This document shows, in pieces, positions 43,773 to 60,618 of a stretch of 64,000 nucleotides of DNA (its first letter is position 1; every line of letters begins with the position of its first letter). The translations under genes were made by a program, and so were the position numbers. The DNA is taken from the IMG/VR virus record IMGVR_UViG_3300031576_000001, positions 186,001-250,000 of that record. One strand, written 5' to 3'. The notes below the pieces were generated by a model, which was not told the origin of the DNA, did not search any database, and was given only the letters and a program-made list of their open reading frames with translations.

Positions 43773-43797
43773 TACGCTCAGAGGCTACCGCGATTCA
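43773..43797 (-). promoter_or_regulatory. ECF-type promoter TGAATC-N15-CGTA
   Basis: Followed by AGAGGGGTT-ATG. Confidence 0.7.
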
Positions 43798-43805
43798 CGA
43801 GAAAG

Positions 43806-44369
43806 TTAGGGCTCGGACGTGAGGCAGTTTAGACCTACAGGGTCAAGGGGACACGCCAGGAGGCGATGGTTCGTGCGTAGGTTCATCCACAAGTGCCCCA
43901 GCACGTTTCTACCTCTCAGGTAGCCGTTTCCTGAGTCTACAGCGCCCCAGAACGTGTCCTTGTGACTCTTCTCGACAATGTACTGAGAGGTCGCACGCAG
44001 AACCACCCCAAGGCGGTCGTAATGGTCAAAGAACTTGTGAGCCAAGCACCAAGCCATGACCTCGACCTTGACCTGTTCCCAGTCAGGGCGGGTCGATGCA
44101 GTGTGTTGCTTGCTCAACATCTTGGCTTGCATGGGGTTCTTTTGCGAACGGATAGCCTCTTGGACGTGGGGTAGGTGGGGGTAGCGGCACGCCTGATAGA
44201 GGCCCTCTGTGTGATACCAGAGCTTACCAGTCTCGCGTTCTAGCGCCAAGAGGGGGAAGTCTGCCGCCATGTTGCTTAGCTCGCCCCAGGGCTCGCGTGT
44301 CTTGCAGAAGAACACGCTTTCGCTGGGGTACCACCGACACTCCCGCATACTGTCAAGGTCGAGAGGCAT
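43806..44369 (-). CDS. NADAR family protein
   Basis: LSNM, TEGLYQA, RPDWEQVKVEVM, IVEKSHKDTFWG, GRNVLGHLWM. Confidence 0.85.
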   Translation of the reverse strand: MPLDLDSMRECRWYPSESVFFCKTREPWGELSNMAADFPLLALERETGKLWYHTEGLYQACRYPHLPHVQEAIRSQKNPMQAKMLSKQHTASTRPDWEQVKVEVMAWCLAHKFFDHYDRLGVVLRATSQYIVEKSHKDTFWGAVDSGNGYLRGRNVLGHLWMNLRTNHRLLACPLDPVGLNCLTSEP

Positions 44370-44373
44370 GGGG

Positions 44374-44694
44374 TCAGTCCTGCCCCGTACCGGAGTACCC
44401 AGGAGCCCCTTTAGCTACGGAGTACCCGAAGTAGGTCTTGGGCGGGTTCCACGACTCCCAAGCCTTATCGTCGAGCTGTACGGGGTCATCGTCCCGGTTA
44501 GGGTAACCTCGGGGCCCCTGGTAGGTCGGGTTGGTGGCGCAATGCGAGCAAAGATACTGCGGGCTGGTGTTCTTCCAGGCTTCCTTTCCCTTGGTGATGA
44601 CAACAGAGCCGGGGGAGAGCACCAGCCCCTCCGTGAAGCACTGCTTGCACCGGTCGCACCGGAAGACTTCTGTGACTTGGGTTTCTTTAGCCAT
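44374..44694 (-). CDS. Zn-finger protein
   Basis: CDRC...LCSHC; GGTGTA-N10-ATG. Confidence 0.5.
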   Translation of the reverse strand: MAKETQVTEVFRCDRCKQCFTEGLVLSPGSVVITKGKEAWKNTSPQYLCSHCATNPTYQGPRGYPNRDDDPVQLDDKAWESWNPPKTYFGYSVAKGAPGYSGTGQD

Positions 44695-44739
44695 GTGCGG
44701 GCTATACACCGGGGGCTTTTCTCCCCGGGGGCTTTGGTT

Positions 44740-46524
44740 ATGACGCTATGTGACCGGGTAGCCGCGAAGTACAAAGAGAAGAAGAAGGTCAAGACCCAGA
44801 AGGGCGAGTCTACGGTCTACCTCTACTCGGAACGCCAGGTCAAGAACCGCAACAAGGAAAAGGCCAAGAGGCTAGAGTCTCTTCGCAAGAACATTGGTGA
44901 CCTTATGGGTCGCGTCAAGCGTGACCTAAAGTCTGAGGACGTGGACACCAAGCTAACCGCGCTCGCCGTTGCGCTTGTTGACTCTACGTATGAACGAATT
45001 GGAAATGAGGAATCTGCGGACGAGCGTGGGCACTACGGGGTTACCGGGTGGCTCAAAAGTCACGTCAAGTTCAGCAAGAGCAAGGCGGTTATCAAGTACA
45101 CGGGCAAGGCTGGCGTCGAGCACACCAAGGAAGTAAAAGACAAAGCCATTCTCTCCGCGCTACGTGACGCTTGCGAGGCGGTTGAGAAAGACGACCCGAT
45201 CTTTGAGTACGACGGGGGCACCGTGACCCCTGAGAAGGTCAATGCTTACCTGAAACCGTCCAAGATAACAGCCAAGGACTTGAGGGGCTATCATGCTAAC
45301 GATACGATCAAGGCCATTCTGAGGACTCTACGCGGTAAGGGCGGCAAGCTCCCCAAAGACAAGGAGGAGCGCAAAGCTAAGCTCAAAGAGGAATGGAAAC
45401 AAGCCCTCGCAGAGACGGCTGAGATTATTGGGCATGAGTCCATTACATTGAAAAAAAGCTACCTTGTGCCCGGGCTTGAGGCAGACTTCATGAAAAACGG
45501 CACGGTAAACGATAAGATGGCTTCCCTACAAAGCTCCCGGTACTCTTCTATTGCTCAGCGAGTAAGCCAGCGATGGGCGCACCTTCACGATTGCGTGATC
45601 CACGCGGGCTGCCCTGTGTGTGGCTTCACGGTGGACGAGGCTACCGGAGAGGTATACGACCCTGGCTACCCCTGTCCTGTGTGTGGCGTGGGTGGCGCCG
45701 TTGTGCTTTCCGCTGAGGACTCCCTGGGTCGACAGAAGATAGCCTCTGAGGCGGACTCTGAGGTTACGCTAGCGGCTCGCGTGATGGTAGCGGCTTATCA
45801 AGGCTCCCCGGGGATAGACAAGACTGCCAACATGGCGGGTCGTGTCAAAGACCTACTTGCCCTTTGGAAGCGGGCACCCTCCGTGTGGGAGAAGATCAAA
45901 GAGGCTATTGGTTTGCCCGACGACTTCGACAGCCTCTCGATGCTGGGCAAGGCGCACGCCCTCATGGGAGCCTTCAAGGAGTTTGCGGCGCAGGGGAAGA
46001 AGGCAGTCGCCCACATTTTCCACCAGCTACCGACGACCTTCCCTCTCAGCATGTTCTTCGTGCCGCGTAAGAAGGTGCCAGGCATCACGGACCTTTTGGC
46101 AAGACTGGTTGACGAGGTACCCTGGCTCAAGTCCGCGCTAGGCAAGGCGAGCGCTCACCTGGGGAAGCTGGACGACTTGCTCGACAAGTACGTGCCCATA
46201 ACCAGCAAGGTCATCAAGGCTGCCGCCTTTATCTGGGTCTGGTTTGCGGCAGCCGAGCTATCGTGGGACATACCGTTTCTGGTCAGGGGTTTTACGGGGC
46301 TCATCGGGCTAGGGGAGCTTTTCGGCTCCATGCCAGAGAGCGCCCTGGGTCTGATAGCCAGCATGTTTGGGCTAGGGTACGGCGCCCTCCCGGTTACCTT
46401 GGTTATCCGGCTTGTCTGGCTTGTCGCAGAGGATTACCTCTCTTGGGTACCCGGCAAGGGGCTCAAGGTTCACTGGGACAAGCTAGGCATACAACGCCAC
46501 GATGAGCTAGTGGTGACTGCGTTA
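44740..46524 (+). CDS. DNA topoisomerase IB fused to a Zn ribbon and a hydrophobic C-terminal domain
   Basis: RIGNE, YTGKAGVEH, TAKDLRGYHAN, IGH...KKSYL give the R-K-R-H-Y pentad; CPVC twice; TM-like tail. Ends at TTA 46522-46524. Confidence 0.8.
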
Positions 46525-46525
46525 G

Positions 46526-46753
46526 TCACCCCACCCCGGGCACGTTCTCTTTAGCGAGCGCGATGACGAGACGGAAGAGCGGAGCACCATCCTTGTTATA
46601 GACGGCGCTGTGGTTGTAACCACCGGGCTCCCCGGTGAGTGCCGCAAGAAGCTCGCTCATGATCCGGTACGCCTCTCCCCTGGTCAGAAGGAGGATCTTG
46701 GTGTCGGCGTCCCCGGAGACAGGGGTTTCTGCACTGAGAGTGATCAGTTTCAT
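46526..46753 (-). CDS. Hypothetical protein
   Basis: Preceded by a CGTA-class promoter. Confidence 0.5.
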   Translation of the reverse strand: MKLITLSAETPVSGDADTKILLLTRGEAYRIMSELLAALTGEPGGYNHSAVYNKDGAPLFRLVIALAKENVPGVG

Positions 46754-46764
46754 GGTGGTTCTCT

Positions 46765-46789
46765 TACGTCGAGCCCTGTTTACCGTTCA
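46765..46789 (-). promoter_or_regulatory. ECF-type promoter TGAACG-N15-CGTA
   Basis: 11 nt upstream of ATG 46753. Confidence 0.65.
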
Positions 46790-46832
46790 CGAGGAAAGAA
46801 ACGGGTCTTTTCAGACCTTGCCCTGAGACCCC

Positions 46833-47354
46833 TAACCGGGCGCTCTCAAACTGGTTCAGCTTTTGGGTGACCTCCTCTTCGGTGAGGGGGAGGGTGACGT
46901 TGAACGTGTCCGTCTTGGCGCTGTACTTGACGGCGAGCCCGTACTGGCGGCACTTCCTGGCTAGACCGAGCGCCTGGCTCGTCTTGCTGGTAGCCTGTCG
47001 GAGGTTCGCCTTGTGGGTAGCGACCCCCTCCTTGTAGGAGGTGGTGAGGTCGCGGGCTACGGTGTGGGCGTTGAGGGGAGAGAGCCCCATTCCGTAGTAC
47101 CGGCTCTCAGGTTTGGTGCCTGGGTAGATGACTTGCGCCAAGAGGTTGTCCTTGGTGGGCTTGGCGGTCCACGACACCACGAGTGAGGGCAACAAGGACG
47201 CCGGAGTGTGCCTGTTGCCCGTGGGGGTCAAGGTGACCTTCTTAACCCCGTCAAAGACCGTGATGGAGGAGAGGGTGAAGTTGAGCCCTTCGAGAAGAAG
47301 CTCGGCTTGCACTGAGGCGAGAAACCACCGTACAGGGAGGGGGTAGCGTGCCAT
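46833..47354 (-). CDS. Hypothetical protein
   Basis: GGTGTA upstream; TTA at 46833-46835 (standard end 46764 runs over the next promoter). Confidence 0.55.
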
Positions 47355-47393
47355 GTTCCTTTGACCGGTACACCGTTCCCCGCCTCTTGGCGT

Positions 47394-47663
47394 ATGGGTA
47401 TGACGGATTACATCCAGCCTGGGGAAACCGTTCTCTACGGAAAATTCAAGAACCGCCCCGCTCTGGTGGTGCGCTTCTTCCGAGATGACCGTGGGGTACC
47501 CATGGTCGAGCTAGAGCCCGTCCCCAAGGGTCGCAAGTCAAACCGGATTATGTCCCTCTTTACCGTGTGGAAGCTACCCGCCAACCGTGCTGAGGCTACC
47601 GCGACCAAGATTGCAGGGCGCTATGTGGGTAGGTATGAGGTATCACCCGATAGCGACGACTTA
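47394..47663 (+). CDS. Small SH3-like hypothetical protein with KIAGRY motif
   Basis: GETVLYGKFKN; TTA at 47661-47663. Confidence 0.5.
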
Positions 47664-48289
47664 GCTTTCCTGGGTCTGCGGCAAATGTAGGAGCCCCCCG
47701 GTGGCGCCGGGCGCCAACGCAACCAAGAGGCTATCTCCGGGTGCGCGTGTTCTAGCCAGGTCATGGTGCGTTCTTTTCGTTTCCACAACGCCTCTAGGCT
47801 AAGAAATGTGGTGCGACCGATGTCCGCATAGCTCTCCCCTTTACCTAGACGGTAAAGAAGAAGGGCGTCTACGCCCGGAGGTTGGTTGACCACGATAACC
47901 GCTAGCTGAGGGAGTACCTCATCGTAAAACGTATTCTCCCGGGCTAGCTCTTCGCGTTGCTCTTTCTCTAGCTGGCGTTGTTTCTGGTCACGTCTGCCCA
48001 TGACCGCCATTTTGCGGCTGTGGTCAATGGCACGGTTTTTTCCGCAGCACGCGGCGTAGTTGAGGGCTGACCAACCCGTCAAACCCTTGGCTAGAACCAG
48101 GGCGACCACCTTGTCAGCGCCCTCTGCCCACTTGGGAAACAAGACCCTCAAAGCGGGAAAGTCTTGCGACGTGCGAAAACCTCTCTCAAAGCCCTCTCGC
48201 ACCCTTACCTCTAGCTCTGGGGGTAGTTTAGCCTCGCCCTGAGAGGGTTCTGAGGTGGCTACGGGCGGCAGCGTCGAGGGCGTTTCCAT
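47621..48289 (-). CDS. ECF-like RNA polymerase sigma factor
   Basis: Region 2-like KNRAIDHSRK and region 4-like HTH GESYADIGRTTFLSLEALWKRKER. Confidence 0.7.
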   Translation of the reverse strand: METPSTLPPVATSEPSQGEAKLPPELEVRVREGFERGFRTSQDFPALRVLFPKWAEGADKVVALVLAKGLTGWSALNYAACCGKNRAIDHSRKMAVMGRRDQKQRQLEKEQREELARENTFYDEVLPQLAVIVVNQPPGVDALLLYRLGKGESYADIGRTTFLSLEALWKRKERTMTWLEHAHPEIASWLRWRPAPPGGSYICRRPRKAKSSLSGDTSYLPT

Positions 48290-48408
48290 TGGGCTCTGTA
48301 CTCAAGTTAGGTGTGAGTAGTCCTGTGTACAATAGTTGACTCGCGCCCGCCAGCCACAAGCACAACGAGCTAGTTGGCACTCAGTAAGGGCACCACTGTT
48401 GGACACAC

Positions 48409-48741
48409 TTACTGAGTGTACCGCTCGAAAACCACGGAGTACCCCGTCTCAGGGGGGTACGTGTGCGACACCCAAGAGGCCGTGTTGCCGTCCAGCGTGA
48501 CGTACCCACACTCGTGAGGGTACGCCGCTCCAGGCTTCGTATCCACGAAGAGACTGACGCCGCCCACAGGGCACGGGTCAACAGGCACCCTCTTTCCCAG
48601 GGTGTCGGTCACTGGCTCTTCATGGTGCTCCGCAGCACGCAGCGAGACGGCGAAGAGGGGGTGGCGTTTCCGTTTCTTGAGGGTAGAGAGGCGCCCCCCA
48701 AAGTTACGGAGAACCGATTCGCGAATTTGGTCGTGGTTCAT
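48409..48741 (-). CDS. Hypothetical protein
   Basis: GGTGTA-N12-ATG; FVD..P.A.Y.H.C.Y motif. Confidence 0.55.
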   Translation of the reverse strand: MNHDQIRESVLRNFGGRLSTLKKRKRHPLFAVSLRAAEHHEEPVTDTLGKRVPVDPCPVGGVSLFVDTKPGAAYPHECGYVTLDGNTASWVSHTYPPETGYSVVFERYTQ

Positions 48742-48768
48742 GCAGTGTGCCCTTACACCAATGGTGAC

Positions 48769-49644
48769 TCAAGAGACCACACCCTCTTGGCTGAAAAGGA
48801 GAAGCTCATCCACCGGACCCCGTGCCGCGCCATCCCGGTTGACGCGACGTGACGCTTGGACCACCACGCCCGCAAAACCCTTGTAGACCCGCCGAGTCTC
48901 TTCGGTGTCCGACTGGCTAAGAAGAGCAGGTATGCCGCGGTGCGTCAACTCTCGGAGGAGTCCTGCCAGTGCGTCGTGGCCAAGCTTGTTTGCCGTGTAC
49001 CCCTCGAACGTACCCAGGTAGGGGGGGTCCAGGTATACAAAGTCAGACTCCCCCAAGAGGGGCATCGTCTCGGCTAGGAGCCTCAAGGCGTCCCCGCACC
49101 GGAGCACGGCGGGCGCAAGGGCTCTTGAGGCTTCCGTCAAGGCGTCCTCCGCAGGTACCAAGAGGGTGTCTTCTTTACCCCAGGACACGTTGTACCTCCC
49201 TCTCTGGTTGACGCGCCAGAGTCCATTGAAGCCACAACGGTTCAGCCCGTAGAAAAAGCTAGCCTGACTTACGCCCTCTCCTCGGGTAGAGTTCAGCATG
49301 GACGCCCAGTGAGCGTAGGTCTCTTGGGGTGCCCCTTGGTAGAGCCGGCGTTGCTCCTTTAGCTCCAAGAGGAGACAGGTGGGGTTAGCCCTCACCTGTT
49401 GGTAGAAGTTGACCAGGGCGGGGTTGGCGTCGGAGAGAAAGGATACCAGCGGGGGTTGCCGCCTCTTGGACAGGGCGAAGAAGACAGCGCCGCCCCCCAT
49501 GAAGGGTTCCACGTAGACCCTCACCCTCTCAGGGGCACGGGGTAGGATCTTACCCAGGAGTTGACCTTTGCCGCCGACCCACTTTAGCAAGGGTTCTGAG
49601 GCTACGGGAGCAGGGTCGGGGTACTCCTCGTCGTCATCTATCAT
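48769..49644 (-). CDS. dam: Dam-like DNA adenine methyltransferase
   Basis: LKWVGGK, YVEPFMGGGAV, NRCGFNGLWRVN, FVYLDPPY. Confidence 0.88.
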   Translation of the reverse strand: MIDDDEEYPDPAPVASEPLLKWVGGKGQLLGKILPRAPERVRVYVEPFMGGGAVFFALSKRRQPPLVSFLSDANPALVNFYQQVRANPTCLLLELKEQRRLYQGAPQETYAHWASMLNSTRGEGVSQASFFYGLNRCGFNGLWRVNQRGRYNVSWGKEDTLLVPAEDALTEASRALAPAVLRCGDALRLLAETMPLLGESDFVYLDPPYLGTFEGYTANKLGHDALAGLLRELTHRGIPALLSQSDTEETRRVYKGFAGVVVQASRRVNRDGAARGPVDELLLFSQEGVVS

Positions 49645-49648
49645 GGGC

Positions 49649-50047
49649 TCAGCACTCGCGTATGAAGGCACTCAGCCCGTGAGAGACCAGTCGGTGCCTC
49701 TCAGCCTGAACCGCGTCCAAGAGGGGCGACGTGAAAACTGGACAAGGCGTTTTGTGATCCAGGGTGTCTACACCCTCTTCGGTCAGGTAGTAGAACGCGT
49801 TCTTGATGCAGGCGCGGTACGCCCGGTAAGCGTCTGCGGTAGGCGTACCAGCGCAAAGCAATACGACTTCCCACGTTTTCTCTTTTGGCTTTAGCGAAGC
49901 CGTAGCGGCTGTGGTTTGCTTGGTGGACTCCAGCGTGACGGCGAGACGTAGCAAGGTGATGCACGCGGCGTCCACGTCGGAGGGCTCGGTTACGCCCTCG
50001 ACCACGGAGAGGAGGTGTTGCAGCTTGGCTTTGATGTCGTTGTTCAC
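49649..50047 (-). CDS. Hypothetical protein
   Basis: GTGA-coupled ORF. Confidence 0.5.
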   Translation of the reverse strand: MNNDIKAKLQHLLSVVEGVTEPSDVDAACITLLRLAVTLESTKQTTAATASLKPKEKTWEVVLLCAGTPTADAYRAYRACIKNAFYYLTEEGVDTLDHKTPCPVFTSPLLDAVQAERHRLVSHGLSAFIREC

Positions 50048-51024: not shown

Positions 51025-51301
51025 GGCGTCTAGATGGCACATACACCAGAAACGCAGGGCTCTGCGCGAAAGAGCCGTTGCCTACAAGGGGGGTGCGTGT
51101 GTGCTCTGTGGGTACAACCACTGTCACGCTGCCCTTGATTTCCACCACCCCGACGCCTTGACCAAGGACTTCAACGTGTCGTCACGCACGGCGTGGACCC
51201 CGGCGCTAAAGCGGGAGCTAGACAAGGTGGTCTTGCTTTGCGCCCGCTGCCACCGAGAGGTTCACGATGGTCTCCACCCCTCTTTGCTAGAGCTTCACTG
51301 A
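51023..51301 (+). CDS. HNH endonuclease-like protein
   Basis: GGACVLCGY..ALDFHH...LLCARCHREVH. Start is uncertain. Confidence 0.75.
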   Translation: MASRWHIHQKRRALRERAVAYKGGACVLCGYNHCHAALDFHHPDALTKDFNVSSRTAWTPALKRELDKVVLLCARCHREVHDGLHPSLLELH

Positions 51302-51383
51302 ACCCAGCGGCAGGTTCGCTAACTCAGGCTCAAGCTAGCCCGCCGACAGACACCCCCATTGCAAACCCTAGCCCAAGACGCAC

Positions 51384-51686
51384 CTAGATTTCCTGCAAGA
51401 CGCGGGCTGCTTCGCCCATGCTGCGCAGGATGTTGACAAGCGGTTGGCAGACGAAGTACGGGTCTGCCACGTCAAGGCGTATATACTCCGACGTGATGGT
51501 ACCCCGAATAGCCCCCATCCGGTCCCCTGCGACCTTGGAAACCAGGAAGGTGCCCTCCTCCCCGGTGACCAAGTTCCCAGCCGCTCCGTCTACCTCGTAC
51601 CCCCCGGAGACCAAGAGGGAGGTGAGCGCTCCCCACACGGACTCGCGAAAGTCCTGTGTATTTGGCAGTACGATCAGGTTTTTCAC
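51384..51686 (-). CDS. Hypothetical protein
   Basis: GTGA-coupled start (MKNLIV). Confidence 0.5.
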   Translation of the reverse strand: MKNLIVLPNTQDFRESVWGALTSLLVSGGYEVDGAAGNLVTGEEGTFLVSKVAGDRMGAIRGTITSEYIRLDVADPYFVCQPLVNILRSMGEAARVLQEI

Positions 51687-52358: not shown

Positions 52359-52382
52359 CCCGGTCGCGGTACCGGCAAGGGG

Positions 52383-54665
52383 TAAGATGGCGATCTTGAC
52401 CTCGGAGAGGGCGAACGTGGCTTGTACGTCCCCCAGCTTGGCGGTCTTCAACGTCAGCTTGCAGTTGTCCAGGGAGGTAAACTCCGAGAACCATACCTGC
52501 CCAAGCACGGTGGCGAGCTTGATCTGTGCGATTTCCCTGAGAAGCTCCCTCGTCTCACGGGTCGCCTCCTCGGCGCGGGCGCGTAGCCAGGTCAACCCTT
52601 CCTCGGGGTACTGGAGGGCAACGTCCTTGATGGCAGGCTCCATCAGCAAGGCGCCAGCGTTACCCTTACCCTTGGCCAGCTTCTCCACAGCCTCTTTGAG
52701 GGAGGGCAACGCTGAGAGCCCCTTGAGACTCACGGTAAGCTCGCTTCCGATGTAATGGTCCGTGGACTCCTTGGTCAGCGCCTTGGGTGCGAACCCGCCG
52801 TAATCCGTGATCCCTTGCTCTTTCAACCAAGATGAAACCTCTTCGCCGTGGATAGCGCTGTACCCCAGGCTGGTCTTGCCCCCACCGTAGTCCTTGAGGT
52901 ACCCCTGGTAGACCTTCTGCCGGGCGCGAGCCTCGGTAAGCTGCATGACCTTCTCGCCCAACGTCTTGGCTGAGAGGGTCTTGGTCATGGAGCGGTTGAC
53001 CACGGCAAGGGAACCCAGGTCAAGAACCGCCTCGACCTCAAAGTCCAGCTTGGTCTCGGAGAGAACCGGTACCCCTTTGGCTTTCAGGTTGGCTAGCGTC
53101 TCGTGCGAGACCTTGACCGGCAAGCTCTTGACATTGACCAGACCGTCACGGATGATGCTGTAGTTCCGGTGAATGTAAGTAGGGAACTTCTCGGGGAGGT
53201 TGCCCACCATGGACGGGGGGAGCCGCTTGGAAAGGTCCACGGTCCCCCACACCTTGACCTGTAGGCTCACGTTCGGGCGATCCTCGTTGTAAACGAGGTT
53301 TTCGATGGTCGAGCCCGCTTCCTTCTCAGCCTCATCGGGCACGAACGTGAGAGGCTCTGGCTTGCTGGCGACAATGCTTGCAATCTTCTCTTGCAAGGTT
53401 TTGACAGCGGCTACCGTGATCTTGGGCTTGCTCATCTGAGCTTGCAACGAGGCGATCTCAGCCGTCTCCTCGTCCGTGAACCGCGAAGAGGCATCCTCCC
53501 GTGCGCGCCCGATCCGGGTGTACTTCCACTCGGGGTGGTACGGCAGAACCCGGTTGGTGCTGTCCGAGGCGAGGATACTGAGCACGTCCAGCACGGTCAC
53601 GGCGTTGTCGTCGGGTACCTTGGTGGGGTCGTAACCCTCTTGGTAGCGAGCGCCCGCGTCAAAGGCTGCCTTGGTCACGTCCGCCTGAAACTCGCTGTAC
53701 TTCTGCTTTCCGAAGCACTTGGCAAACCGGGTAATGAAGCGCACGTCACCCGTGAACTTCAACAAGGGGAGCACCACGTCGGGCTGCATCCGGCTTGAGA
53801 ACAGGCTAATCGCCGCGTACACGGGGGGCAGTACCGCCTCGTCAGGCTTCCCCGTGGTCGGCGCACCCCCCTTGCTCGCAGAGAGGTAGTACACGGTGGT
53901 CACGTCGGGGGGTACCGTGACGGAGCCCCCCTCTACGCCAAACGTCAGCACGTCACCCTGAGAGAGGGCAAAGGCCACGTTACCTACCGCGTCCCCGGAG
54001 AGGGTCAGCGTCTTCTTGGGGGTCGCCGCGACCTTGCGCCCGAAAACCTTGGTGATTTGTGGCTCGTAAGCCGAGAAGTCCTCCGTGAAGAGGAGGGCAC
54101 CCCCCAGCTTGGCTGCCATCGCAGAGAGGAGGGAGCGGTCAGCGTAAAACCCCCACTCGACCACGGCGGCACTATCCGCCTCAATCTTGCCCAGGGTAGC
54201 CAGGATCTTCTCTCGGCTCCCCTGGTTGTCGTAACCGTCGCTGAGGAACAGGAGGGCTACTGCCTCCCCGGGGTGCGCCTTCCTTAGCCTGGCGATCACG
54301 CGCGCCGCTTCCTCCAAGGGGTCTTGGAAGCCTGTGAGCCCTACCGGCTTGAGCCAGCGGTCCACCGCAGCGTTGACCTTGGCCAGGTCTTTGAGGTTAC
54401 GTAGCGCCACGTCCTCGAAGATGACCCCACACTCCCCCCTGCCGGAGAACCAGATCAGGCTCACGGTGTCCTTCTCGCCCACCAGCGAGGGAAACTTGCC
54501 CTTGATCTGCGCTCGCATGTCGGGCAGCGCACCGCTCATTGAGCCGCTGCAATCGACAACCAGCAAGTGATTCGTCGGGGGCGCTTTCGCTGGGGTGCTG
54601 TCTTTGCCCGCGCTAAAGGCTACCAGCGCGAGTCCGTTACCAAGAGGCGTTGTTGTCGGTTTCAT
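52383..54665 (-). CDS. vWA-domain protein
   Basis: MIDAS VVDCSGSM, GLT, FLSDGYDN. The only in-frame TTA follows EVKIAI (standard end 52194). Confidence 0.85.
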
Positions 54666-54726
54666 CGTTGGGCTAAGGTACACCCCAAACGGTAGGACCG
54701 TAGACCCAAACTATGTCCTACCCTCG

Positions 54727-55053
54727 TCAGTCGTTGTTGAGGGCGTCTGGCACGCACCCCAGCTTCTTGTACACTCTGGCAAAGAAGGCTTCCACCTCTT
54801 CGATGGTGTTGCCCTCCTGGGTTGCCAGGCGAAACGACATCGGGTTTCCCGCGTCAGACGGGAGGTAGAACGTGACCTCCCACGCGAAAGAGGTAGACAT
54901 CCCAAAAAACTGCCATTGCTGGCACTGTAGGAAGTAGAGCTTCTTGTCGTCACCCCACACAGTCTTCAGAAACAGAGCGACCTTGAAGGCATCCCGGTCA
55001 TAGTATACCCGGTAGCCCGTGGCTTTGAGGTTTTCTGGCGTAATAGGGGTCAT
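54727..55053 (-). CDS. Hypothetical protein
   Basis: GGAG then ATG (MTPITPEN). Confidence 0.55.
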   Translation of the reverse strand: MTPITPENLKATGYRVYYDRDAFKVALFLKTVWGDDKKLYFLQCQQWQFFGMSTSFAWEVTFYLPSDAGNPMSFRLATQEGNTIEEVEAFFARVYKKLGCVPDALNND

Positions 55054-55087
55054 GTGTGTCTCCGTAGGTGCCACTCTTGGCGAGGCG

Positions 55088-55390
55088 TCAGGGTACAACG
55101 CAGAAGTTGTCTGGCTCAGAGGGGCACGTCTCTAGGACCAAGGTGTGAAAGACCCCTACCTTGTCTTGGTAGGTCAGGGTCGCCGCAGTCTTGCTGACGG
55201 GGGTGACCTGTGGCTTGTCGATACCATTGGTTGCCGCCCAAACCAGCACCCGCTCTTTGGTGACGGAGAGTACCTCTGGGGTCCGGATAGCCTCCCAATC
55301 TCGGTTTGTTCGCGAGATTTTGCGCACCGCTAGCCCGGTAACCAACAGGGTGCCTGCGCAAACGAGCAGCAGGACTGCACGATCTATCAT
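55088..55390 (-). CDS. Membrane-anchored hypothetical protein
   Basis: GGTGTA-N10-ATG; N-terminal TM helix. Confidence 0.55.
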   Translation of the reverse strand: MIDRAVLLLVCAGTLLVTGLAVRKISRTNRDWEAIRTPEVLSVTKERVLVWAATNGIDKPQVTPVSKTAATLTYQDKVGVFHTLVLETCPSEPDNFCVVP

Positions 55391-55420
55391 GCCCGGAGCT
55401 TACACCCTCTTGGTCTTCTG

Positions 55421-55639
55421 TCAGGGCTTAGGGGGAAGGCGCCGCACGACCCTGCGAAGCGCCTCTACCGTGGCGCTAGCGGGATTGTTGGGGTCAAAGC
55501 CGCTCTCGGTTTTCATCCAGGGGTAGGGTCGCCCGTTCTCTTCGTGGTACCCGAAGGTCAAAGTGACGCTGTTCAAGGCGGACAGCCCGAGGCTCTCGCG
55601 AGCCTCTTCAATCAACTCGCGCATTTGCAGGGGAGTCAT
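55421..55639 (-). CDS. Hypothetical protein
   Basis: AGGAG ribosome-binding site. Confidence 0.5.
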   Translation of the reverse strand: MTPLQMRELIEEARESLGLSALNSVTLTFGYHEENGRPYPWMKTESGFDPNNPASATVEALRRVVRRLPPKP

Positions 55640-55657
55640 GGTTATCTTCTCCTAGGC

Positions 55658-56011
55658 TCAGGGGAACTGGGCGACGCCCTTGAAGGTGTAGATCGGACCC
55701 TCGACGGCGCCCACCGTCACGGTCGCGGGCTTGCTCAGCTTGCGCAACACGACCCGGTTGAGGGGGTCGCCCGTGTTGAGGCTCACCTTGTCGCCGCTCA
55801 GGCGAGCCGAGGACATCGCCCACATGACGTGGGCGGGGGTGCCGAAGACCTTGAAGGTCACCCGGTAACCCATGCCAGGCTCGAAGGTGGCGCCCTTGAT
55901 GGTGCCTCGCATACCCTTGCGGGTCGAGACGGCTTCGCAGCCCTTTTCCACGATGAAAAGGGTGCCGACGAGGCGCGCGGGGTCAAACTTGGGGGTTTTG
56001 GAGGTGGTCAT
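55658..56011 (-). CDS. Hypothetical protein
   Basis: Starts at a CGTA-class promoter. Confidence 0.6.
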   Translation of the reverse strand: MTTSKTPKFDPARLVGTLFIVEKGCEAVSTRKGMRGTIKGATFEPGMGYRVTFKVFGTPAHVMWAMSSARLSGDKVSLNTGDPLNRVVLRKLSKPATVTVGAVEGPIYTFKGVAQFP

Positions 56012-56020
56012 AACCCCTCT

Positions 56021-56045
56021 TACGCTCACCCTGGCGGGCGACTCA
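56021..56045 (-). promoter_or_regulatory. ECF-type promoter TGAGTC-N15-CGTA
   Basis: Followed by AGAGGGGTT-ATG; 3' half identical to the 43773 copy. Confidence 0.7.
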
Positions 56046-56116
56046 CGGAAAAGATGTCGGGAGGGGACACCTTTTAATAGAAAGGACTCGACGATGGGAG
56101 TCACCCTTTACCCTTG

Positions 56117-57709
56117 TAACCGAGAGGAGGCTAGGTGAACGATGTCCCACGCGGGCTCGCCTGTGTAGACCTCAGCCTCTAGGGGTGTGAAGTGCCCCAG
56201 TAGGAGCCTTGCCTTCTTGCTGGCAGAAACCTCCAAAGACTCGATGGCTGCCATGAGGTTCAGCAAGACCTCTGACGACTCGTTCTTGAGGGGACCGTCA
56301 ACAAGGTGGTTCAGCAAGTCCAGCGCCTTGGGGTTGAGGGAATAATGCGACCGCCCCCCTTTGAGCGCCGTGAGGTTGATCTTTACCCCGAGAGGCTTGC
56401 TGGTGATGGGGGTCAGTCGCCAGTCGTCGCGCAGGGCGACAACGGATTCTGGTTTGAGGGCTACCGCCTTACCGTTGAAAAACATGGTTGCCGTGTACTG
56501 TGTGGGTCTCACGCCCTGAGCCACGTCAAACATGATTTCCACCTGGATCTTGCGACCCGCACCTTCAGCCTCAGCAAGGAAGCCCGCGCCAGCCAGGGCG
56601 TCTTTCAAAGAGAGGGTCTCTTTCTCGGTCCTCACGTCCTTTGCGGTGAGCGTAGTCTTGGTGGGGCTAAGGACGGCAAACTTCTTAGGTACCTCGAAGT
56701 CCCCAGGTAGACTCTTGGCGAGCGCCAGCATGACTTTCGGAATCGCTGAGAGGTTCTTGGCTACCCCGGAGACTGCGAGAAAGGACTCCTCGGCTACGGT
56801 CTTTAGCCCCGTGGCGCTAACACTGGGGGTTTCATTGTATCGCACCCCACAGAGCACGCCGTACTGTTCGCCCTTCTTACCCACCGCTACGAAGATTTGC
56901 GCGGTTTGGTCCACGGTTGAGCCCTCCCTTCTCAGCGTTTTCCAGCCGTGGTCGGCTACCACGCCCCATTCCACCCCGGAGGGGGGGTTGTAGAAGGGCA
57001 CCCCTGGAATGGTGGTGGGTGGCTTCTTACTGTTGCGATAGTGGTTGACGGGTACCGCAAAGAGAGCCACTGTATCCTGCAACGCGTCAACCACACCCTC
57101 TTTGGTTGTAAAAGTGCGGACTACCTGTGGGACTGACGACAATTTACCTGAGCCTTGGAGGGAGTAAGCCCATTTGGACAGATCCCCTCTTGGCTGAAAC
57201 ACTTTGAGGAATAGATTCCCGTCGTAGGTATTACCAGCGATGCGACAGGCTACACCTTCGTTGATCAGTTCGATCTTGAAAAGCGACCACGGCACAAGGT
57301 CTGGCATTTGTGCCGTAAGATAGCGTAGCCAGTGGGGGGAAGCCTCTTGGCATACCCTTAGAAGATCCGTAGCTGGGGGCGGTTGCTGGGGTCGCGGTGC
57401 GGGGCGCGTGTACGGTGACTGTGGACGGGGAGCGTAACCACCCCCACCCCCGCTGTACTCGGGCGTAGCGCGCTGTACCCCCGTTAGTACGTCCTTGGCC
57501 ACGTTGACCTGGACCATCTTGCTTGGGTCACCACCCCGGTCAGGGTGGTTCTCAATCGCCTTGCGCTTGTACGCCTTCTTGATGTCCTCTTCGGTGGGTG
57601 TACCCGTCAAACCTAGCAAAGCCAGCGCTTCGCTACGCTTCATGGCTTGGACCAGGCGAGCATAGAGGGTTCTCTTGTAACGGCGAACAAGTTCGTTTGG
57701 GTCAAGCAT
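56117..57709 (-). CDS. J-domain (DnaJ N-terminal) protein, long
   Basis: IKKAYKRKAIENHPDRGG...VNVAKDVL. TTA three codons before the TAA at 56108. Confidence 0.8.
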
Positions 57710-57814
57710 GGCTTCTCATCACAGAGGGGGATAAAAACTACCTTTTTCCCCGAGAGTCTAAAGTAAGATGCCGCGCTACCTCTTGGCTATCGGCGTGCTA
57801 CACTCCTGCACACC

Positions 57815-58114
57815 ATGAAAGCTCTATTGATCCTGTTGGTTCTGCTCACGGCGTCGAGCACGGCTTACGCTGACATTATGCCAGGGAGGTTCCCCCGCTA
57901 CAACCCGCCACCCCGTTATATACTGTGGCAGGAGCCCCCGGCGTGGGATGACCACTCGCCGGTCCCTAGTGCGCCTCTACCTGGCACGCCTCAACCCTGG
58001 GAAGTACCGGTACCTGCAACGCCCCCTGCCCCTGCGGGGGCGCTGGCGCTGGTCATGCTGGCTCTAGGTGCTACCGCCCTCTTGGTTACCAGGCGCAACG
58101 CAAAAGCAGCCTGA
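57815..58114 (+). CDS. Small secreted Pro-rich protein with C-terminal TM anchor
   Basis: Signal peptide ending AYA-D, Pro-rich body, TM helix followed by RR. Confidence 0.65.
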   Translation: MKALLILLVLLTASSTAYADIMPGRFPRYNPPPRYILWQEPPAWDDHSPVPSAPLPGTPQPWEVPVPATPPAPAGALALVMLALGATALLVTRRNAKAA

Positions 58115-58150
58115 CACAGAGGGTGTCCTTCTATTCCCTACCTGACAGGT

Positions 58151-58531
58151 ATGCACCATCGGGTTGTCGCACAGTACGTTCGCAAGCTCTACGCCCGCCT
58201 CGTCCTGGCAATGACCACCCAGGAAGCCAAGAGGCTCTTGGGGTTGACCTCAGCCTACCCGACCCAAGAGGAGGTAAGCAAAGCCTGGAAACAGAAGGCG
58301 CGTGAGAACCACCCCGACCTGGGGGGTAGTGACGCGGTGATGGCTCAGATCAACGCAGCCAAGGACGTACTTCTCGGGCTAAACCAGCGATTCACCCCGG
58401 ACCCTACGTGGTCTACTGGGGGTCCGCAACAGGCTCAAGCCACGCCAGCGCAGGGGTGGTCATGCAGAACCGCCCTCCAGCACGACCCACAGGGGATAGC
58501 CAGAGAGAACAGTTTCAATACCTCCGGGTTA
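58151..58531 (+). CDS. J-domain protein, short
   Basis: VSKAWKQKARENHPDLGG...INAAKDVL. TTA at 58529-58531; 3' end uncertain. Confidence 0.7.
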
Positions 58532-58887
58532 GAGAGCGCCGCAACCTCTTCCTCTGAGAGGTTAGCCAGGGGCAGCGCCATCGCGGAGCCCCACGGAGCC
58601 GTCACGACAAGGTTGGCACCCTCCAGCGTCACGGTAGGGTCAGGTTGGCTTGTGTCGTAATTGTAAGCGTCGTGGCAGTAGTCTCGGGCGAGGTCGTCCA
58701 GCGAAGTGTACCCCCCGGCGCCCGCACACTTCTCGACCCACCACCCCAGGTCCGTCGCGTGCAGCCGGAAAGCCGTACCGTTGCCCAGCGTCAACTTGAC
58801 CATCGCCTCCCTCGCGTTAGGTGGGTCTACAGAGACCACCACCTGACCCACCAAGAGACCCCTTAGCTCCTCTAGCGCGTTGCTCAT
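58435..58887 (-). CDS. Hypothetical protein
   Basis: GGTGTA-N11-ATG. Confidence 0.55.
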   Translation of the reverse strand: MSNALEELRGLLVGQVVVSVDPPNAREAMVKLTLGNGTAFRLHATDLGWWVEKCAGAGGYTSLDDLARDYCHDAYNYDTSQPDPTVTLEGANLVVTAPWGSAMALPLANLSEEEVAALSNPEVLKLFSLAIPCGSCWRAVLHDHPCAGVA

Positions 58888-59108
58888 GCCGCCTGCCTTA
58901 CACCAACCACCCCCGAAGAACCACCACGTACCCTCTTGGTTTCCATACAGACCCATATGGAACTTCCGGGTAGGTCTAAGATGACCCTGCCACTTTTTAC
59001 GATGTTTTTATCACTGAGCCCCGAGGGGAGGACTCCAGTGTGCATCGACAGAATTTCTCCATACACTTGTAGGTCGAGGTGGGTGCAAGGAGACCCGGAA
59101 GAAAGTTG

Positions 59109-59133
59109 TGAATCGTGAGGCTAGCCAAGCGTA
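59109..59133 (+). promoter_or_regulatory. ECF-type promoter TGAATC-N15-CGTA
   Basis: Followed by GGAGGGGTT-ATG 59143. Confidence 0.7.
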
Positions 59134-59142
59134 GGAGGGGTT

Positions 59143-59442
59143 ATGAACGCCACCGAAACCTGCCGCTGCCCCCTCTGCTGTACCCCCTTTGACAACCACG
59201 ACGGGTTGTTTGACCTTTGCGAGGGTTGCTCCGGGGTGGTGACCTCCGACCTGGACAGCATCGCCCTCTTCGCGGCTGAGGGGGTCTCCGATTACCTCTA
59301 CGAAGAGGTTCCCGCCCTGTGCCCCTGCCTCTCGGTGTGCCCGGAGTGCGCGGAGCCTACCGCTCCCGACGAGTGGTCCCCGCACAGCGTGGCGCCGCTG
59401 TGCATCAACTGCGACCACTACCCTTTCGCGGCGGACGCCTGA
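59143..59442 (+). CDS. Cys-rich Zn-finger protein
   Basis: Multiple CxxC pairs. Confidence 0.55.
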   Translation: MNATETCRCPLCCTPFDNHDGLFDLCEGCSGVVTSDLDSIALFAAEGVSDYLYEEVPALCPCLSVCPECAEPTAPDEWSPHSVAPLCINCDHYPFAADA

Positions 59443-59469
59443 CCGCTCCGCTCAGCGAGGAGAACCCCC

Positions 59470-59682
59470 ATGGACATCACGATTCGCGTTTCCACGCTGG
59501 ACGGGTCTAATCGCACCCGCAAGTTCAAGACCCTCGCGGGGGCTCGCAAGTTCGCACAGAACCGGGTTGGGGAGCACCCCGAGGTCAGCGAGTTCTTTCG
59601 GTACGCGGTAGGCGCCTGGGGTGACGTGAAGGTGAGCGTGACGGGTTGCACGCTCGCTGACCTCTTTCCGCCCAAGCCCTGA
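59470..59682 (+). CDS. Hypothetical protein
   Basis: GAGGAG site; RKFKTLAGARKFA. Confidence 0.6.
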   Translation: MDITIRVSTLDGSNRTRKFKTLAGARKFAQNRVGEHPEVSEFFRYAVGAWGDVKVSVTGCTLADLFPPKP

Positions 59683-59706
59683 GCCGGGCGGGTGTATCTA
59701 CGCCCC

Positions 59707-60072
59707 ATGCCCGAATTCGTAACCAAAACGTGGACCCCCGTGGACCACAGTTGCCGCCAGGGGCGTTCCCTGGCTGGCCACTGGGAGGTCCACACCACGG
59801 ACAGTCCAGAGAAGGTCCATCTGGACCAAGACGCCTCGTTTCCCTGGCAGGGGTTCCGTGAGCCTGTGGTGCGCTCCTACAGCATACAGATCCCCGAGAA
59901 GCTCGCCTATGCCTTCGAGGAGGCAATCAACAAGCACTTTCCAGGGACACTGGACGTGCTCTACGTTTGCCCGATTTACACCAAAGAGGAGGTCCGGTAC
60001 GATTACGACCCCTCCAACGTGAGGCTAGCTTGGTTTTGCCAGGGTTTTGGAGCAGCGGTATCGAGCTACTGA
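59707..60072 (+). CDS. Hypothetical protein
   Basis: GGTGTA-N10-ATG. Confidence 0.55.
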   Translation: MPEFVTKTWTPVDHSCRQGRSLAGHWEVHTTDSPEKVHLDQDASFPWQGFREPVVRSYSIQIPEKLAYAFEEAINKHFPGTLDVLYVCPIYTKEEVRYDYDPSNVRLAWFCQGFGAAVSSY

Positions 60073-60075
60073 TAC

Positions 60076-60097
60076 CGCTATCGCGTTTTCGATAGCG
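60076..60097. terminator. Stem-loop between convergent genes
   Basis: CGCTATCG-N6-CGATAGCG. Confidence 0.55.
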
Positions 60098-60114
60098 TGT
60101 CACCTAACCTGGCG

Positions 60115-60564
60115 TAAGCCCTTGACAATCAAGGTAAAAGAGCCAAGCGGAGAGGTAACCTGCATGGTGCGCTCTCCTGGGGGGGTGTAGACATCGAGGG
60201 GGTAAGCACCCTTGGGTAGGAGGTTACCCAGGTGGTAGTGAAGCTCACCCCACACCCAAGAGGCAAGGCTAATCTCGGGGGGCTTCTCGGTCTTGGTACT
60301 GTCCTCTTCCCAGACTTGCACCGTGGGCTCAGGGTTGAAGGTGGGTGGGGGGTTTATGGTGACCTGGAACCGGTAGAGGTGGGAGCCCTCTGGGTAGCCC
60401 TGTGGGCTAAGGGGGAGGTCACGCTCCAAGTAGAGGTTCTTCTCCGTGGTTGCCCAGTTGTAGGCGAGCCAGGCGGTCATCACGCGGGGAGTGTACTTCT
60501 CTGGGTCTTCTCCGGGTTGGGCGACTCTCATGCGGTGTGGGTGCTGTGTGCTCGTATCGGTCAA
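60115..60564 (-). CDS. Hypothetical protein
   Basis: TTA at 60115-60117, five codons before the TGA at 60100. Confidence 0.5.
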
Positions 60565-60593
60565 GGTGGGCTTTCTTTACCCTCAAATTCTTG

Positions 60594-60618
60594 TGAAGGG
60601 TAGCCCCACCTTAACGTA
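60594..60618 (+). promoter_or_regulatory. ECF-type promoter TGAAGG-N15-CGTA
   Basis: 9 nt upstream of ATG 60628. Confidence 0.6.

What the first reader, a model, noticed from the sequence alone, without database searches (positions are those of the whole stretch)
43773..60618. Five-copy ECF-type promoter with invariant 15-nt spacer, plus a phage ECF-like sigma factor
gTGA(A/G)NN-N15-CGTA occurs at 43773(-), 46765(-), 56021(-), 59109(+) and 60594(+). Each is 9 nt (once 11 nt) before an ATG, and three share the RGAGGGGTT-ATG tail. The layout resembles ECF promoters such as B. subtilis SigW (TGAAAC-N16-CGTA). An ECF-like sigma gene lies at 47621-48289. The regulated genes are small hypotheticals, suggesting an early or host-takeover regulon with very short leaders (inference).
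Basis: partly seen in the sequence, partly recalled or inferred. Interest (0 to 1): 0.65.

Follow-up and report, generated by a model that had tools for sequence, protein, structure and literature searches.

The report
Phage promoter motif abutting start codons
The five sites are real members of a 24-copy, two-block promoter-like motif in an uncultivated giant cave phage. The motif sits so close to each start codon that the messages should have almost no leader, but the proposed phage sigma factor could not be confirmed.

Summary
The window lies in a 322,633-bp IMG/VR phage contig from a cave metagenome. Genome-wide there are 24 sites with the consensus A/T-rich patch, GTGAAYC, N15, CGTAAGAGGGGTT, ATG (22 strict matches against 0.2 in shuffles). 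Five are in the window. The spacer is 15 bp at every site. Seventeen sites have CGTA exactly 9 nt before an ATG. With the A of ATG as +1, the blocks fall at -35..-29 and -13..-10. This is a rigid ECF-style promoter that would give leaderless or at most 4-nt-leader mRNAs. All 24 downstream genes are small, unrelated orphans.

A second, commoner signal, GGTGTA-N10/11-ATG (43 sites at N10/11; 56 with N6-16 and an ORF), has no -35 block. It recurs in a related phage.

The "sigma gene" (47621-48289) is a true orphan. It has no Pfam, NCBIfam, PHROG or PDB hit and no homologue among 1.84 billion proteins. Only language-model features and a non-discriminating profile alignment suggest an ECF fold. A different protein outside the window carries definite sigma region-4 domains.

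No RNA data exist, so start sites, timing and the reading factor remain inferred.

The parts
43761..43806 (-). Class-1 promoter 1: A/T patch, GTGAATC (43798-43792), 15-bp spacer, CGTA (43776-43773), AGAGGGGTT, ATG (43763-43761)
42864..43763 (-). 299-aa orphan gene starting at the promoter-adjacent ATG
   Evidence: no Pfam or PHROG family
46751..46798 (-). Class-1 promoter 2: GTGAACG, N15, CGTA (46768-46765), 11 nt, ATG (46753-46751). A terminator-like hairpin GGTCTgaaaAGACC plus a T-run lies directly upstream.
46526..46753 (-). 75-aa orphan gene
56009..56054 (-). Class-1 promoter 3: GTGAGTC, N15, CGTA (56024-56021), AGAGGGGTT, ATG (56011-56009). It heads the minus-strand gene cluster that also contains P0001.
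55658..56011 (-). 117-aa orphan gene
59100..59145 (+). Class-1 promoter 4: GTGAATC (59108-59114), N15, CGTA (59130-59133), GGAGGGGTT, ATG (59143-59145)
59143..59442 (+). 99-aa Cys-rich orphan gene
60585..60630 (+). Class-1 promoter 5 (weakest tail): GTGAAGG, N15, CGTA (60615-60618), ATATTGGGT, ATG (60628-60630)
60628..60948 (+). 106-aa gene with a weak sub-threshold SWIM zinc-finger hit and one paralogue in the genome
47621..48289 (-). It has neither promoter motif directly upstream. An 11-bp inverted repeat separates it from the upstream gene.
58942..59100 (+). One of six copies of a ~160-nt structured repeat that ends in the hairpin GGGTGCAAGGAGACCC, just upstream of promoter 4
48754..48759 (-). 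Class-2 element GGTGTA, 12 nt before the ATG of the 110-aa gene just upstream of P0001
47369..47374 (-). Class-2 GGTGTA, 14 nt before the ATG of the 196-aa gene downstream of P0001
54679..54684 (-). Class-2 GGTGTA, 13 nt before the ATG of the VWA-domain protein (phrog_2426)
55401..55406 (-). Class-2 GGTGTA, 10 nt before the ATG of a 100-aa gene
59691..59696 (+). Class-2 GGTGTA, 10 nt before the ATG of a 121-aa gene
2923..2949 (.). Two divergent class-2 hexamers (TACACC 2923-2928 and GGTGTA 2944-2949) inside a 50-bp region between divergent ATGs at 2911(-) and 2962(+)

Best explanation
The five sites belong to a phage-specific class of about 24 bipartite promoters: an A/T-rich patch at -43..-39, GTGAAYC at -35..-29, a rigid 15-bp spacer, and CGTA at -13..-10 followed by AGAGGGGTT. 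I infer that they are read by bacterial-type RNA polymerase carrying a specificity factor with ECF-like (group 4) recognition rules.

The -10 block ends 9 nt before the ATG at 17 of 24 sites. Transcription should therefore start at or within about 4 nt of the start codon, giving leaderless or near-leaderless mRNAs for small, unrelated orphan genes. These genes are scattered through the non-structural parts of a phage genome of at least 322 kb.

Shown directly: the motif, its copy number, the invariant spacing, and its orientation and distance to start codons. Inferred: promoter function, the start site, and the identity of the factor. The orphan protein P0001 is the only candidate in the contig that could have both a sigma-2-like and a sigma-4-like part, but this is unproven.
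For: Copy number and spacing:
- 22 strict matches against 0.2 in shuffles, and 24 curated sites.
- The spacer is exactly 15 whether the -35 block or the -10 block is used as anchor. The CGTA-to-ATG distance is looser (9 nt x17, 10 x2, 11 x1, 12 x3, 16 x1). The two blocks therefore form one DNA-level unit.
- At genome 254703, CGTA is kept, AGAGG is lost, and a fresh AGGAG appears 7 nt before a more distant ATG.

Placement:
- All 24 sites point into an ATG-started ORF. The products share no family and are not paralogues.
- A 61-bp divergent region (genome 261042/261104) holds a class-1 and a class-2 element back to back, with no room for leaders.

Machinery:
- No phage RNA polymerase was detected, so host polymerase plus a factor is the economical reading.
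- ECF rules (-35 TGAAAC, -10 CGTA, spacers 14-17) are documented in PMC5758882.
- -10 elements abutting ORFs are shown to drive leaderless genes in PMC12340547.
- P0001 and the class-1 motif are both absent from two related phages, whereas GGTGTA and the sig2 protein recur in them.
Against: - No transcript data exist for this uncultivated phage, so no start site is known.
- The tail TAAGAGGGG resembles a Shine-Dalgarno sequence, which a leaderless mRNA would not contain.
- Only 7 of 24 sites have the ECF-typical AAC in the -35 block (14 have AAT).
- P0001 fails every profile search. It is not preceded by the motif and has no recognisable anti-sigma neighbour.
- The contig is estimated at only 68% complete, so the true factor or a phage polymerase may lie in the missing part.
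Confidence: 0.6

Rival explanations
1. P0001 (47621-48289) is the cognate phage sigma. It would be an extremely diverged ECF-like protein, made from a class-2 promoter upstream, that then switches on the 24 class-1 promoters as a second temporal wave.
For: - The nearest ESM-Atlas feature clusters (0.94-0.96) are all sigma-70/ECF families.
- There is a collinear 176-column alignment to an ECF profile. 'NYAACCGKNRAIDHSRK' falls on region 2.4 and 'LYRLGKGESYADIGRTTFLSLEALWKRKER' on the region-4 helix-turn-helix (P 0.012, rank 6 of 186 phage proteins).
- The protein and the motif are both private to this phage.
- The gene lies in a cluster headed by a class-1 site and follows a gene with a class-2 site.
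Against: - No Pfam, NCBIfam, PHROG or PDB match even at E<=10, for the whole protein or its halves.
- An NT5C nucleotidase scores higher in the same profile test.
- The single-sequence AlphaFold model is unusable (pLDDT 51) and its fold search is meaningless.
- The Atlas structure search finds no sigma.
- There is no autoregulatory motif and no anti-sigma partner.
Confidence: 0.3
2. One sigma, from the host or the phage, reads both classes. Both share a -10 core G-Y-G-T-A. GGTGTA(nnnT) would be strong enough to work alone, like an extended -10 promoter. The weaker aGCGTA would need the GTGAAYC -35 block.
For: - Class 1 has A-15 G-14 C-13 G-12 T-11 A-10, and one site has TGTA. Class 2 is yGGTGTAnnnT, with T at 47% against 20% in controls.
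- Both classes sit at nearly the same distance from the ATG (9 against 10-11 nt) and are interspersed in the same genome regions.
- In Deinococcus, adding a -35 to an ORF-adjacent -10 boosts transcription (PMC12340547).
Against: - Class 2 recurs in a relative (G001) while class 1 does not.
- A rigid 15-bp spacer and the conserved tail are unusual for a merely compensatory -35.
- ECF sigmas normally need both blocks.
Confidence: 0.25
3. Transcription starts upstream and the tail is an RNA signal. GTGAAYC would be a single -10-like element, a cousin of GGTGTA. CGUAAGAGGGGUU would be a strong Shine-Dalgarno site or translational operator in a leader of about 20 nt.
For: - TAAGAGGGG is close to the ideal TAAGGAGG.
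- Variants with a longer CGTA-ATG distance keep or rebuild a GGAG-like stretch 4-7 nt before the ATG (genome sites 1908, 303454, 254703).
- cGTGAA shares 4 of 6 bases with GGTGTA.
Against: - The invariant part is the GTGAAYC-to-CGTA spacing, not the tail-to-ATG spacing. A promoter-to-SD distance has no reason to be fixed.
- The conserved A-15, G-14, C-13 and G-12 are not explained by anti-SD pairing.
- The rest of the genome hardly uses Shine-Dalgarno sequences.
- Site 60593 has no SD-like tail at all.
Confidence: 0.15
4. The sites are read by a host sigma, either an unusual housekeeping sigma or a host ECF sigma triggered by infection. They would be the early promoters of host-takeover genes.
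For: - No phage polymerase and no certain complete phage sigma was found.
- The downstream genes are small orphans in variable regions, like T4 early genes behind PeSL cassettes (PMC2839356, PMC4122927).
- The sites carry A/T-rich, UP-like patches.
Against: - The host is unknown, and no host genome carries the motif in the collections that could be scanned.
- The consensus matches no known housekeeping promoter. There is no enrichment of sigma-70 or Bacteroidetes-type promoters.
- The motif is absent from two related phages.
Confidence: 0.2

Closest known systems
ECF (group 4) sigma promoters, e.g. Bacillus subtilis SigW (TGAAAC-N16-CGTA)
   Same: Two short blocks, a -35 of the type TGAAxC and a -10 of CGTA, with a rigid spacer inside the 14-17 bp ECF range (PMC5758882). 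Conservation at CGT is near-absolute.
   Different: - The spacer is 15, not 16.
- AAT replaces the hallmark AAC at 14 of 24 sites.
- There are 9 further conserved bases (AGAGGGGTT) between the -10 block and the ATG.
- The start codon sits where the transcript should begin.
- There is no autoregulated sigma / anti-sigma operon.
-10 elements directly abutting ORFs that drive leaderless genes (Deinococcus-Thermus; Thermus phage phiYS40 middle/late promoters)
   Same: A promoter element lies at a fixed short distance from the ATG, and many genes are organised this way. Class 2 (GGTGTAnnnT, no -35) is the closest analogue. The Deinococcus case is shown experimentally in PMC12340547. The phiYS40 case (Sevostyanova et al. 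2007) is cited there, and its details are from my own knowledge.
   Different: The element here is GGTGTA / CGTA rather than plain TANNNT. Class 1 adds a strict -35 block. The host is unknown, and leadered genes here lack the GGAG sites typical of Deinococcus-Thermus.
Phage-encoded sigma factors with private promoter classes (SPO1 gp28 and gp33/34, T4 gp55)
   Same: A phage-specific consensus unlike host promoters, present in tens of copies and marking a gene class (own knowledge).
   Different: No sigma could be verified here, and the temporal class is unknown. T4 gp55 promoters are -10-only, and SPO1 promoters have different consensus sequences.
PeSL promoter-stem-loop cassettes of T4-type phages
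   Same: Conserved promoter units, sometimes preceded by a stem-loop, flank small orphan ORFs in variable regions (PMC2839356, PMC4122927). Here 4-6 sites follow a conserved hairpin or the 160-nt repeat.
   Different: PeSL promoters are host sigma-70 early promoters. Here most sites share only the ~45-bp promoter, not a promoter-terminator composite.

Membership tests
ECF-sigma-dependent promoter | -10 block with a CGT core | tested here: met
   CGTA at 23 of 24 sites and TGTA at one
ECF-sigma-dependent promoter | -35 block containing the AAC core | tested here: inconclusive
   GTGA is invariant and the next base is A at 23 of 24 sites. The following base gives AAT x14, AAC x7, AAG x2 and AGT x1.
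ECF-sigma-dependent promoter | Rigid spacer within 14-17 bp | tested here: met
   The spacer is 15 bp at every real site, with either block as anchor. The range is from PMC5758882.
ECF-sigma-dependent promoter | Transcription start a few nt downstream of the -10 block, dependent on an ECF sigma | not testable with these tools
   The only holders are DNA runs of one cave metagenome, with no RNA.
Sigma-70 family / ECF sigma factor (P0001) | Sigma region 2 domain detectable by profile | tested here: not met
   PF04542 has no match in the contig. Pfam and NCBIfam give no hit at E<=10 for P0001 or its N-terminal half.
Sigma-70 family / ECF sigma factor (P0001) | Sigma region 4 helix-turn-helix detectable by profile | tested here: not met
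   PF08281 and PF04545 hit only genome 58.9 kb (sig2), not P0001. The C-terminal half has no Pfam hit.
Sigma-70 family / ECF sigma factor (P0001) | Remote similarity over both domains | tested here: inconclusive
   hhalign against 14 ECF sequences gives a collinear 176 columns, P 0.012, probability 3.5%, and rank 6 of 186. A nucleotidase scores higher. ESM-Atlas feature neighbours are all sigma families at 0.94-0.96.
Sigma-70 family / ECF sigma factor (P0001) | Binds RNA polymerase core | not testable with these tools
Leaderless-gene promoters (-10 adjacent to the ORF) | -10 element at a fixed distance that places +1 on the start codon | tested here: met
   Class 1: CGTA is 9 nt from the ATG at 17 of 24 sites. 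Class 2: GGTGTA is 10-11 nt from the ATG at 43 sites, 9.1 times the base rate.
Leaderless-gene promoters (-10 adjacent to the ORF) | Mapped 5' ends at the start codon | not testable with these tools
   No RNA runs.
PeSL-type promoter-stem-loop cassette | Conserved stem-loop coupled to the promoter at most copies | tested here: not met
   Only four sites share upstream sequence beyond the ~45-bp core.

The most novel reading that the evidence does not exclude
A giant phage runs most of its non-structural gene expression as leaderless mRNAs from promoters fused to start codons. It would use a lineage-conserved -10-only class (GGTGTA) plus a private 24-promoter ECF-style regulon. That regulon would be read by an orphan sigma so diverged that no profile method recognises it.
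Probability: 0.2. Interest if true: 0.7.

Novelty: new variant of a known kind. Interest (0 to 1): 0.5.

Why it matters
How huge phages without their own RNA polymerase programme host polymerase is largely unknown. This genome offers two sharply defined promoter-like classes, about 24 and about 50 copies, both welded to start codons. That implies gene-by-gene leaderless expression in a genome that barely uses Shine-Dalgarno sites.

If confirmed, it would extend the "-10 next to the ORF" mode from Deinococcus-Thermus and phage phiYS40 to an unrelated huge-phage lineage. It would give a compact, orthogonal promoter/factor pair for synthetic biology. It would also show that functional sigma factors can hide among ORFans that are invisible to profile searches.

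If the sigma claim fails, the motif still defines a clean regulon of 24 unknown small proteins. These are typical candidates for host-takeover or anti-defence functions.

Tried and rejected
Homology and structure tests on P0001 that gave nothing usable:
- Pfam, PHROG and NCBIfam scans and a PDB sequence search.
- The 5.8-billion word search. The 1.84-billion HMMER search was then used because the protein stayed open.
- A paralogue search inside the genome.
- A narrow RpoE-orthologue profile: no signal, and low power even for the true sigma-4 protein.
- A single-sequence AlphaFold model (pLDDT 51) and a Foldseek search on it: meaningless.

Searches elsewhere:
- An exact class-1 pattern scan of IMG/VR found no other contig.
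- The 160-nt repeat core is likewise absent elsewhere, and there is no Rfam family.
- Host inference failed. A GroEL scan found nothing. Homologues of the thymidylate-synthase-like protein scatter over Actinobacteria, Saccharimonadia and Pseudanabaena genomes or MAGs, among others, at 33-48% identity, which is uninformative.

Ideas rejected:
- Gene duplication as the source of the repeats: the products are unrelated.
- Chance: shuffles give 0.2.
- GGTGTA as a Shine-Dalgarno site: only GGTG could pair with the anti-SD, the TA is invariant, the spacing is too long, and copies also follow tRNA genes.
- Sigma-70 or Bacteroidetes-type promoters: not enriched.
- A third motif for the structural operons: none found.
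- TAG recoding by the suppressor-like tRNA: no sign.

Read laying was not run, because only DNA contigs of the source sample hold the sequence. No alternative genetic code was used.

Full report
**Context.** The window is bases 186001-250000 of a single 322,633-bp IMG/VR viral contig. The contig has 58.6% G+C, is linear, and is about 68% complete by CheckV. The only sequencing runs that hold it are DNA runs of one cave metagenome, and no RNA run exists. No transcription start could therefore be observed, and read laying was not used.

The genome is a huge tailed phage. The first 41 kb of the window encode helicases, DnaB, a PolA-type DNA polymerase, methyltransferases and a thymidylate synthase. 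Terminase, portal, baseplate and tail genes lie in long plus-strand blocks at genome 60-94 kb and 105-182 kb. A 38-tRNA array, a GroEL and intein-bearing RNR and helicase genes are also present. The nearest relatives share only 29-41% identity in the DNA polymerase. No single-subunit or multisubunit RNA polymerase was detected.

**The observation.** All five sites are present as described. The loose pattern gives nine window matches against 2.5 expected. The four extra matches lack the flanking features and are chance.

The true motif is much richer. With the A of the ATG as +1, it has four parts:
- an A/T-rich patch at -43..-39;
- GTGAAYC at -35..-29;
- fifteen largely unconserved bases, with a weak nTGAG at the 5' end;
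- (a)gCGTA at -15..-10, then AGAGGGGTT, then ATG.

A genome-wide scan finds 24 good copies. A strict regular expression finds 22 against a mean of 0.2 (maximum 2) in shuffled genomes. When either block is used alone as anchor, the other lies at a spacer of exactly 15 bp at every real site. Other spacings occur only as singletons.

The CGTA-to-ATG distance is 9 nt at 17 sites, 10 at two, 11 at one, 12 at three and 16 at one. All sites point into an ORF that begins with that ATG. The 24 products (33-299 aa) have no Pfam family and are not paralogues of one another. The repetition is therefore a signal and not a by-product of gene duplication.

**What it is.** Three features mark a promoter contacted by one protein complex: two conserved blocks, an invariant spacer, and a position at -35 and -10 relative to a fixed downstream point. 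The consensus falls in ECF-sigma sequence space. B. subtilis SigW uses TGAAAC and CGTA, and ECF spacers range from 14 to 17 bp (PMC5758882).

The -10 block ends 9 nt before the ATG, so initiation should fall on the start codon or within about four bases of it. The mRNAs would be leaderless or nearly so.

Three further observations fit this reading:
- At genome 254703, CGTA is retained and the AGAGG tail is lost. The ATG is 16 nt away, and a new AGGAG appears 7 nt before it, as expected if only that transcript has a leader.
- At genome 261042/261104, a 61-bp region between divergent start codons holds a class-2 hexamer and a complete class-1 promoter back to back, with nothing left over.
- Most other genes of the phage lack Shine-Dalgarno sequences. 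Their usual context is gaaaACC-ATG. The SD-like look of AAGAGGGG is therefore not typical of this genome.

A precedent exists. In Deinococcus-Thermus, -10 elements directly adjacent to ORFs drive leaderless genes, and an added -35 strengthens them (PMC12340547). The middle and late promoters of Thermus phage phiYS40 are reported to behave likewise (Sevostyanova et al. 2007, cited in that paper; the details are from my own knowledge).

The hexamer GGTGTA occurs 268 times in the genome. In 43 cases an ATG follows after 10 or 11 nt. That is 9.1 times the base rate, by far the strongest hexamer-to-ATG coupling in the genome, and control hexamers give about one such case. Widening the window gives 56 such sites, counting distances of 6-16 nt and ORFs of at least 40 aa.

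No -35 block accompanies these sites. The refined consensus is yGGTGTAnnnT. TA then falls at -12/-11 if the A of ATG is +1, which is a -10-only promoter geometry.

Class-2 sites precede many larger genes, including helicase, methylases and the VWA protein, and nearly every gene of the minus-strand cluster at window 46.5-57.7 kb. Two divergent copies share a 50-bp intergenic region at window 2911-2962. Copies also follow several tRNA genes, which argues against a ribosome-binding role.

The same coupling is the top de novo signal in a related 110-kb contig, G001 (41% DNA polymerase identity), with 11 matches against 3 in the control. A more distant complete 427-kb phage, G002, shows GGTGTA-N7-ATG in 10 of 22 matches. 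The class-1 motif is absent from both relatives and from all other IMG/VR contigs.

**The sigma claim.** ORF 47621-48289(-) encodes P0001 (222 aa). It has no match in any of the following:
- Pfam, PHROGs or NCBIfam, even at E<=10 and even as separate halves;
- PDB sequences;
- the 5.8-billion word search;
- a full HMMER scan of 1.84 billion representatives;
- the rest of this genome;
- the two related phages.

The evidence in favour is weak. The nearest ESM-Atlas feature clusters (0.94-0.96) are all sigma-70/ECF families. An alignment to a profile of 11 bacterial ECF sigmas plus three RpoE sequences is collinear over 176 columns and puts plausible region 2.4 and region 4.2 motifs in register (P 0.012). 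However, P0001 ranks only sixth of 186 phage proteins in that test, and a clear nucleotidase ranks above it. The single-sequence structure model is unusable.

P0001 is not preceded by either motif. An 11-bp inverted repeat separates it from the upstream gene, which has a class-2 site. Its neighbours show no anti-sigma features.

A different protein, sig2 (genome 58756-59403, outside the window), is the only protein in the contig with profile-supported sigma domains. It has two region-4-like helix-turn-helix domains and no region 2 (TIGR02937 at 49 bits, hhalign 89%). It has a 40%-identical homologue in the complete 427-kb relative.

The phyletic pattern therefore pairs the conserved items (sig2, GGTGTA) and the private items (P0001, class 1). 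This is suggestive, but it rests on two relatives only.

**Mechanism, as far as it can be stated.**
- Shown: the motifs, their counts, their spacing and their placement.
- Inferred with fair confidence (0.6): class 1 is a bipartite promoter that launches leaderless or near-leaderless mRNAs.
- Open: which factor reads it (P0001 0.3; a sigma shared with class 2 0.25; a host sigma 0.2), and whether the regulon is early or later.
- The main structural rival (0.15) places the start site after GTGAAYC and treats the tail as a Shine-Dalgarno site or operator. The fixed -35-to-CGTA spacing and the looser tail-to-ATG spacing argue against it.

**Comparison and novelty.** The motif works like an ECF promoter. 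It passes the CGT-core and rigid-spacer tests, is ambiguous on the AAC core, and cannot be tested for sigma dependence. It also works like the ORF-adjacent -10 promoters of leaderless genes. Its distribution before small orphan genes recalls the PeSL cassettes of T4-type phages (PMC2839356, PMC4122927), but only four copies share sequence beyond the core.

I file it as a new variant of a known kind: a phage-private, ECF-style promoter fused to start codons. It is accompanied by a lineage-conserved -10-only class, in an uncultivated huge phage with an unknown host.

**Verdict.** Interest is 0.5.

Noticed in passing
window 2923-2949, 47369-47374, 48754-48759, 54679-54684, 55401-55406, 59691-59696, 61294-61299 and about 45 more genome-wide: A second promoter-like class, GGTGTA-N10/11-ATG. 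It has 43 sites at N10/11 and 56 with N6-16 and an ORF, has no -35 block, and refines to yGGTGTAnnnT. It is also the top hexamer-ATG coupling in a related IMG/VR contig (L022/G001).
   Followed up: yes
window 58942-59100; genome 2145-2303(-), 126030-126187(+), 145856-146014(+), 182764-182922(-), about 163040-163190(-): A ~160-nt repeat in six copies with an invariant core TTTACGATGTTTTTATCACTG and a plausible multi-hairpin fold. Four copies end in a class-1 promoter and one in a class-2 site. There is no Rfam family, and it is not found in other viral contigs. Five sequences are too few to show covariation. It may be a small RNA gene.
   Followed up: partly
genome 58756-59403(+) (L001:1363-2010): A 215-aa protein with two sigma-region-4-like helix-turn-helix domains and no region 2. 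It lies just upstream of the terminase/portal block and has a 40%-identical homologue in a complete 427-kb phage. It is a candidate late or class-2 transcription factor.
   Followed up: partly
genome 19542-31300 (L006:1542-13256): A TROVE/Ro60-like protein lies next to an array of 38 tRNA genes. Ro60 usually works with Y RNAs, so a phage Y-RNA-like partner may exist.
   Followed up: no
genome 307803-307877(-) (L019:5803-5877): A tRNA with a CUA anticodon (amber-suppressor-like, called 'Pyl' by ARAGORN). TAG still ends 67 of 280 called genes, and reading TAG as sense opens frames no more than reading TGA as sense does. There is therefore no sign of recoding.
   Followed up: partly
window 48350-48410(-): A perfect 11-bp inverted repeat, CACTCAGTAAG-N19-CTTACTGAGTG, lies between the 110-aa gene and P0001. 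It could be a terminator, a processing site or an operator.
   Followed up: no
genome 33-94 kb and most other genes: Start codons largely lack Shine-Dalgarno sequences. The usual context is purine-rich then ACC-ATG (A at -3 in 43%, C at -1 in 54%), a Kozak-like pattern known from Bacteroidota. The host remains unknown.
   Followed up: partly
genome 38973-41855, 119964-124772; window 2893-7050, 31387-33942: Inteins or LAGLIDADG homing-endonuclease insertions in the ribonucleotide reductase, a UvrD-like helicase, a large helicase and apparently a methyltransferase.
   Followed up: no
window 44269-46554(+): A 761-aa protein with a eukaryotic-type topoisomerase IB catalytic core (Pfam PF01028, 7e-26), which is unusual in phages. 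A class-2 site and a 106-aa ORF lie antisense within its 5' part, so its true start may be further downstream.
   Followed up: no
genome 6266-8319(+) (L005:6266-7192, 7192-8319): Two adjacent proteins (308 and 375 aa) align over about 185 columns to the ECF profile, with scores slightly above P0001 (probability 6-9%). Neither has Pfam support. They may be further sigma-like candidates, or they may be noise.
   Followed up: partly
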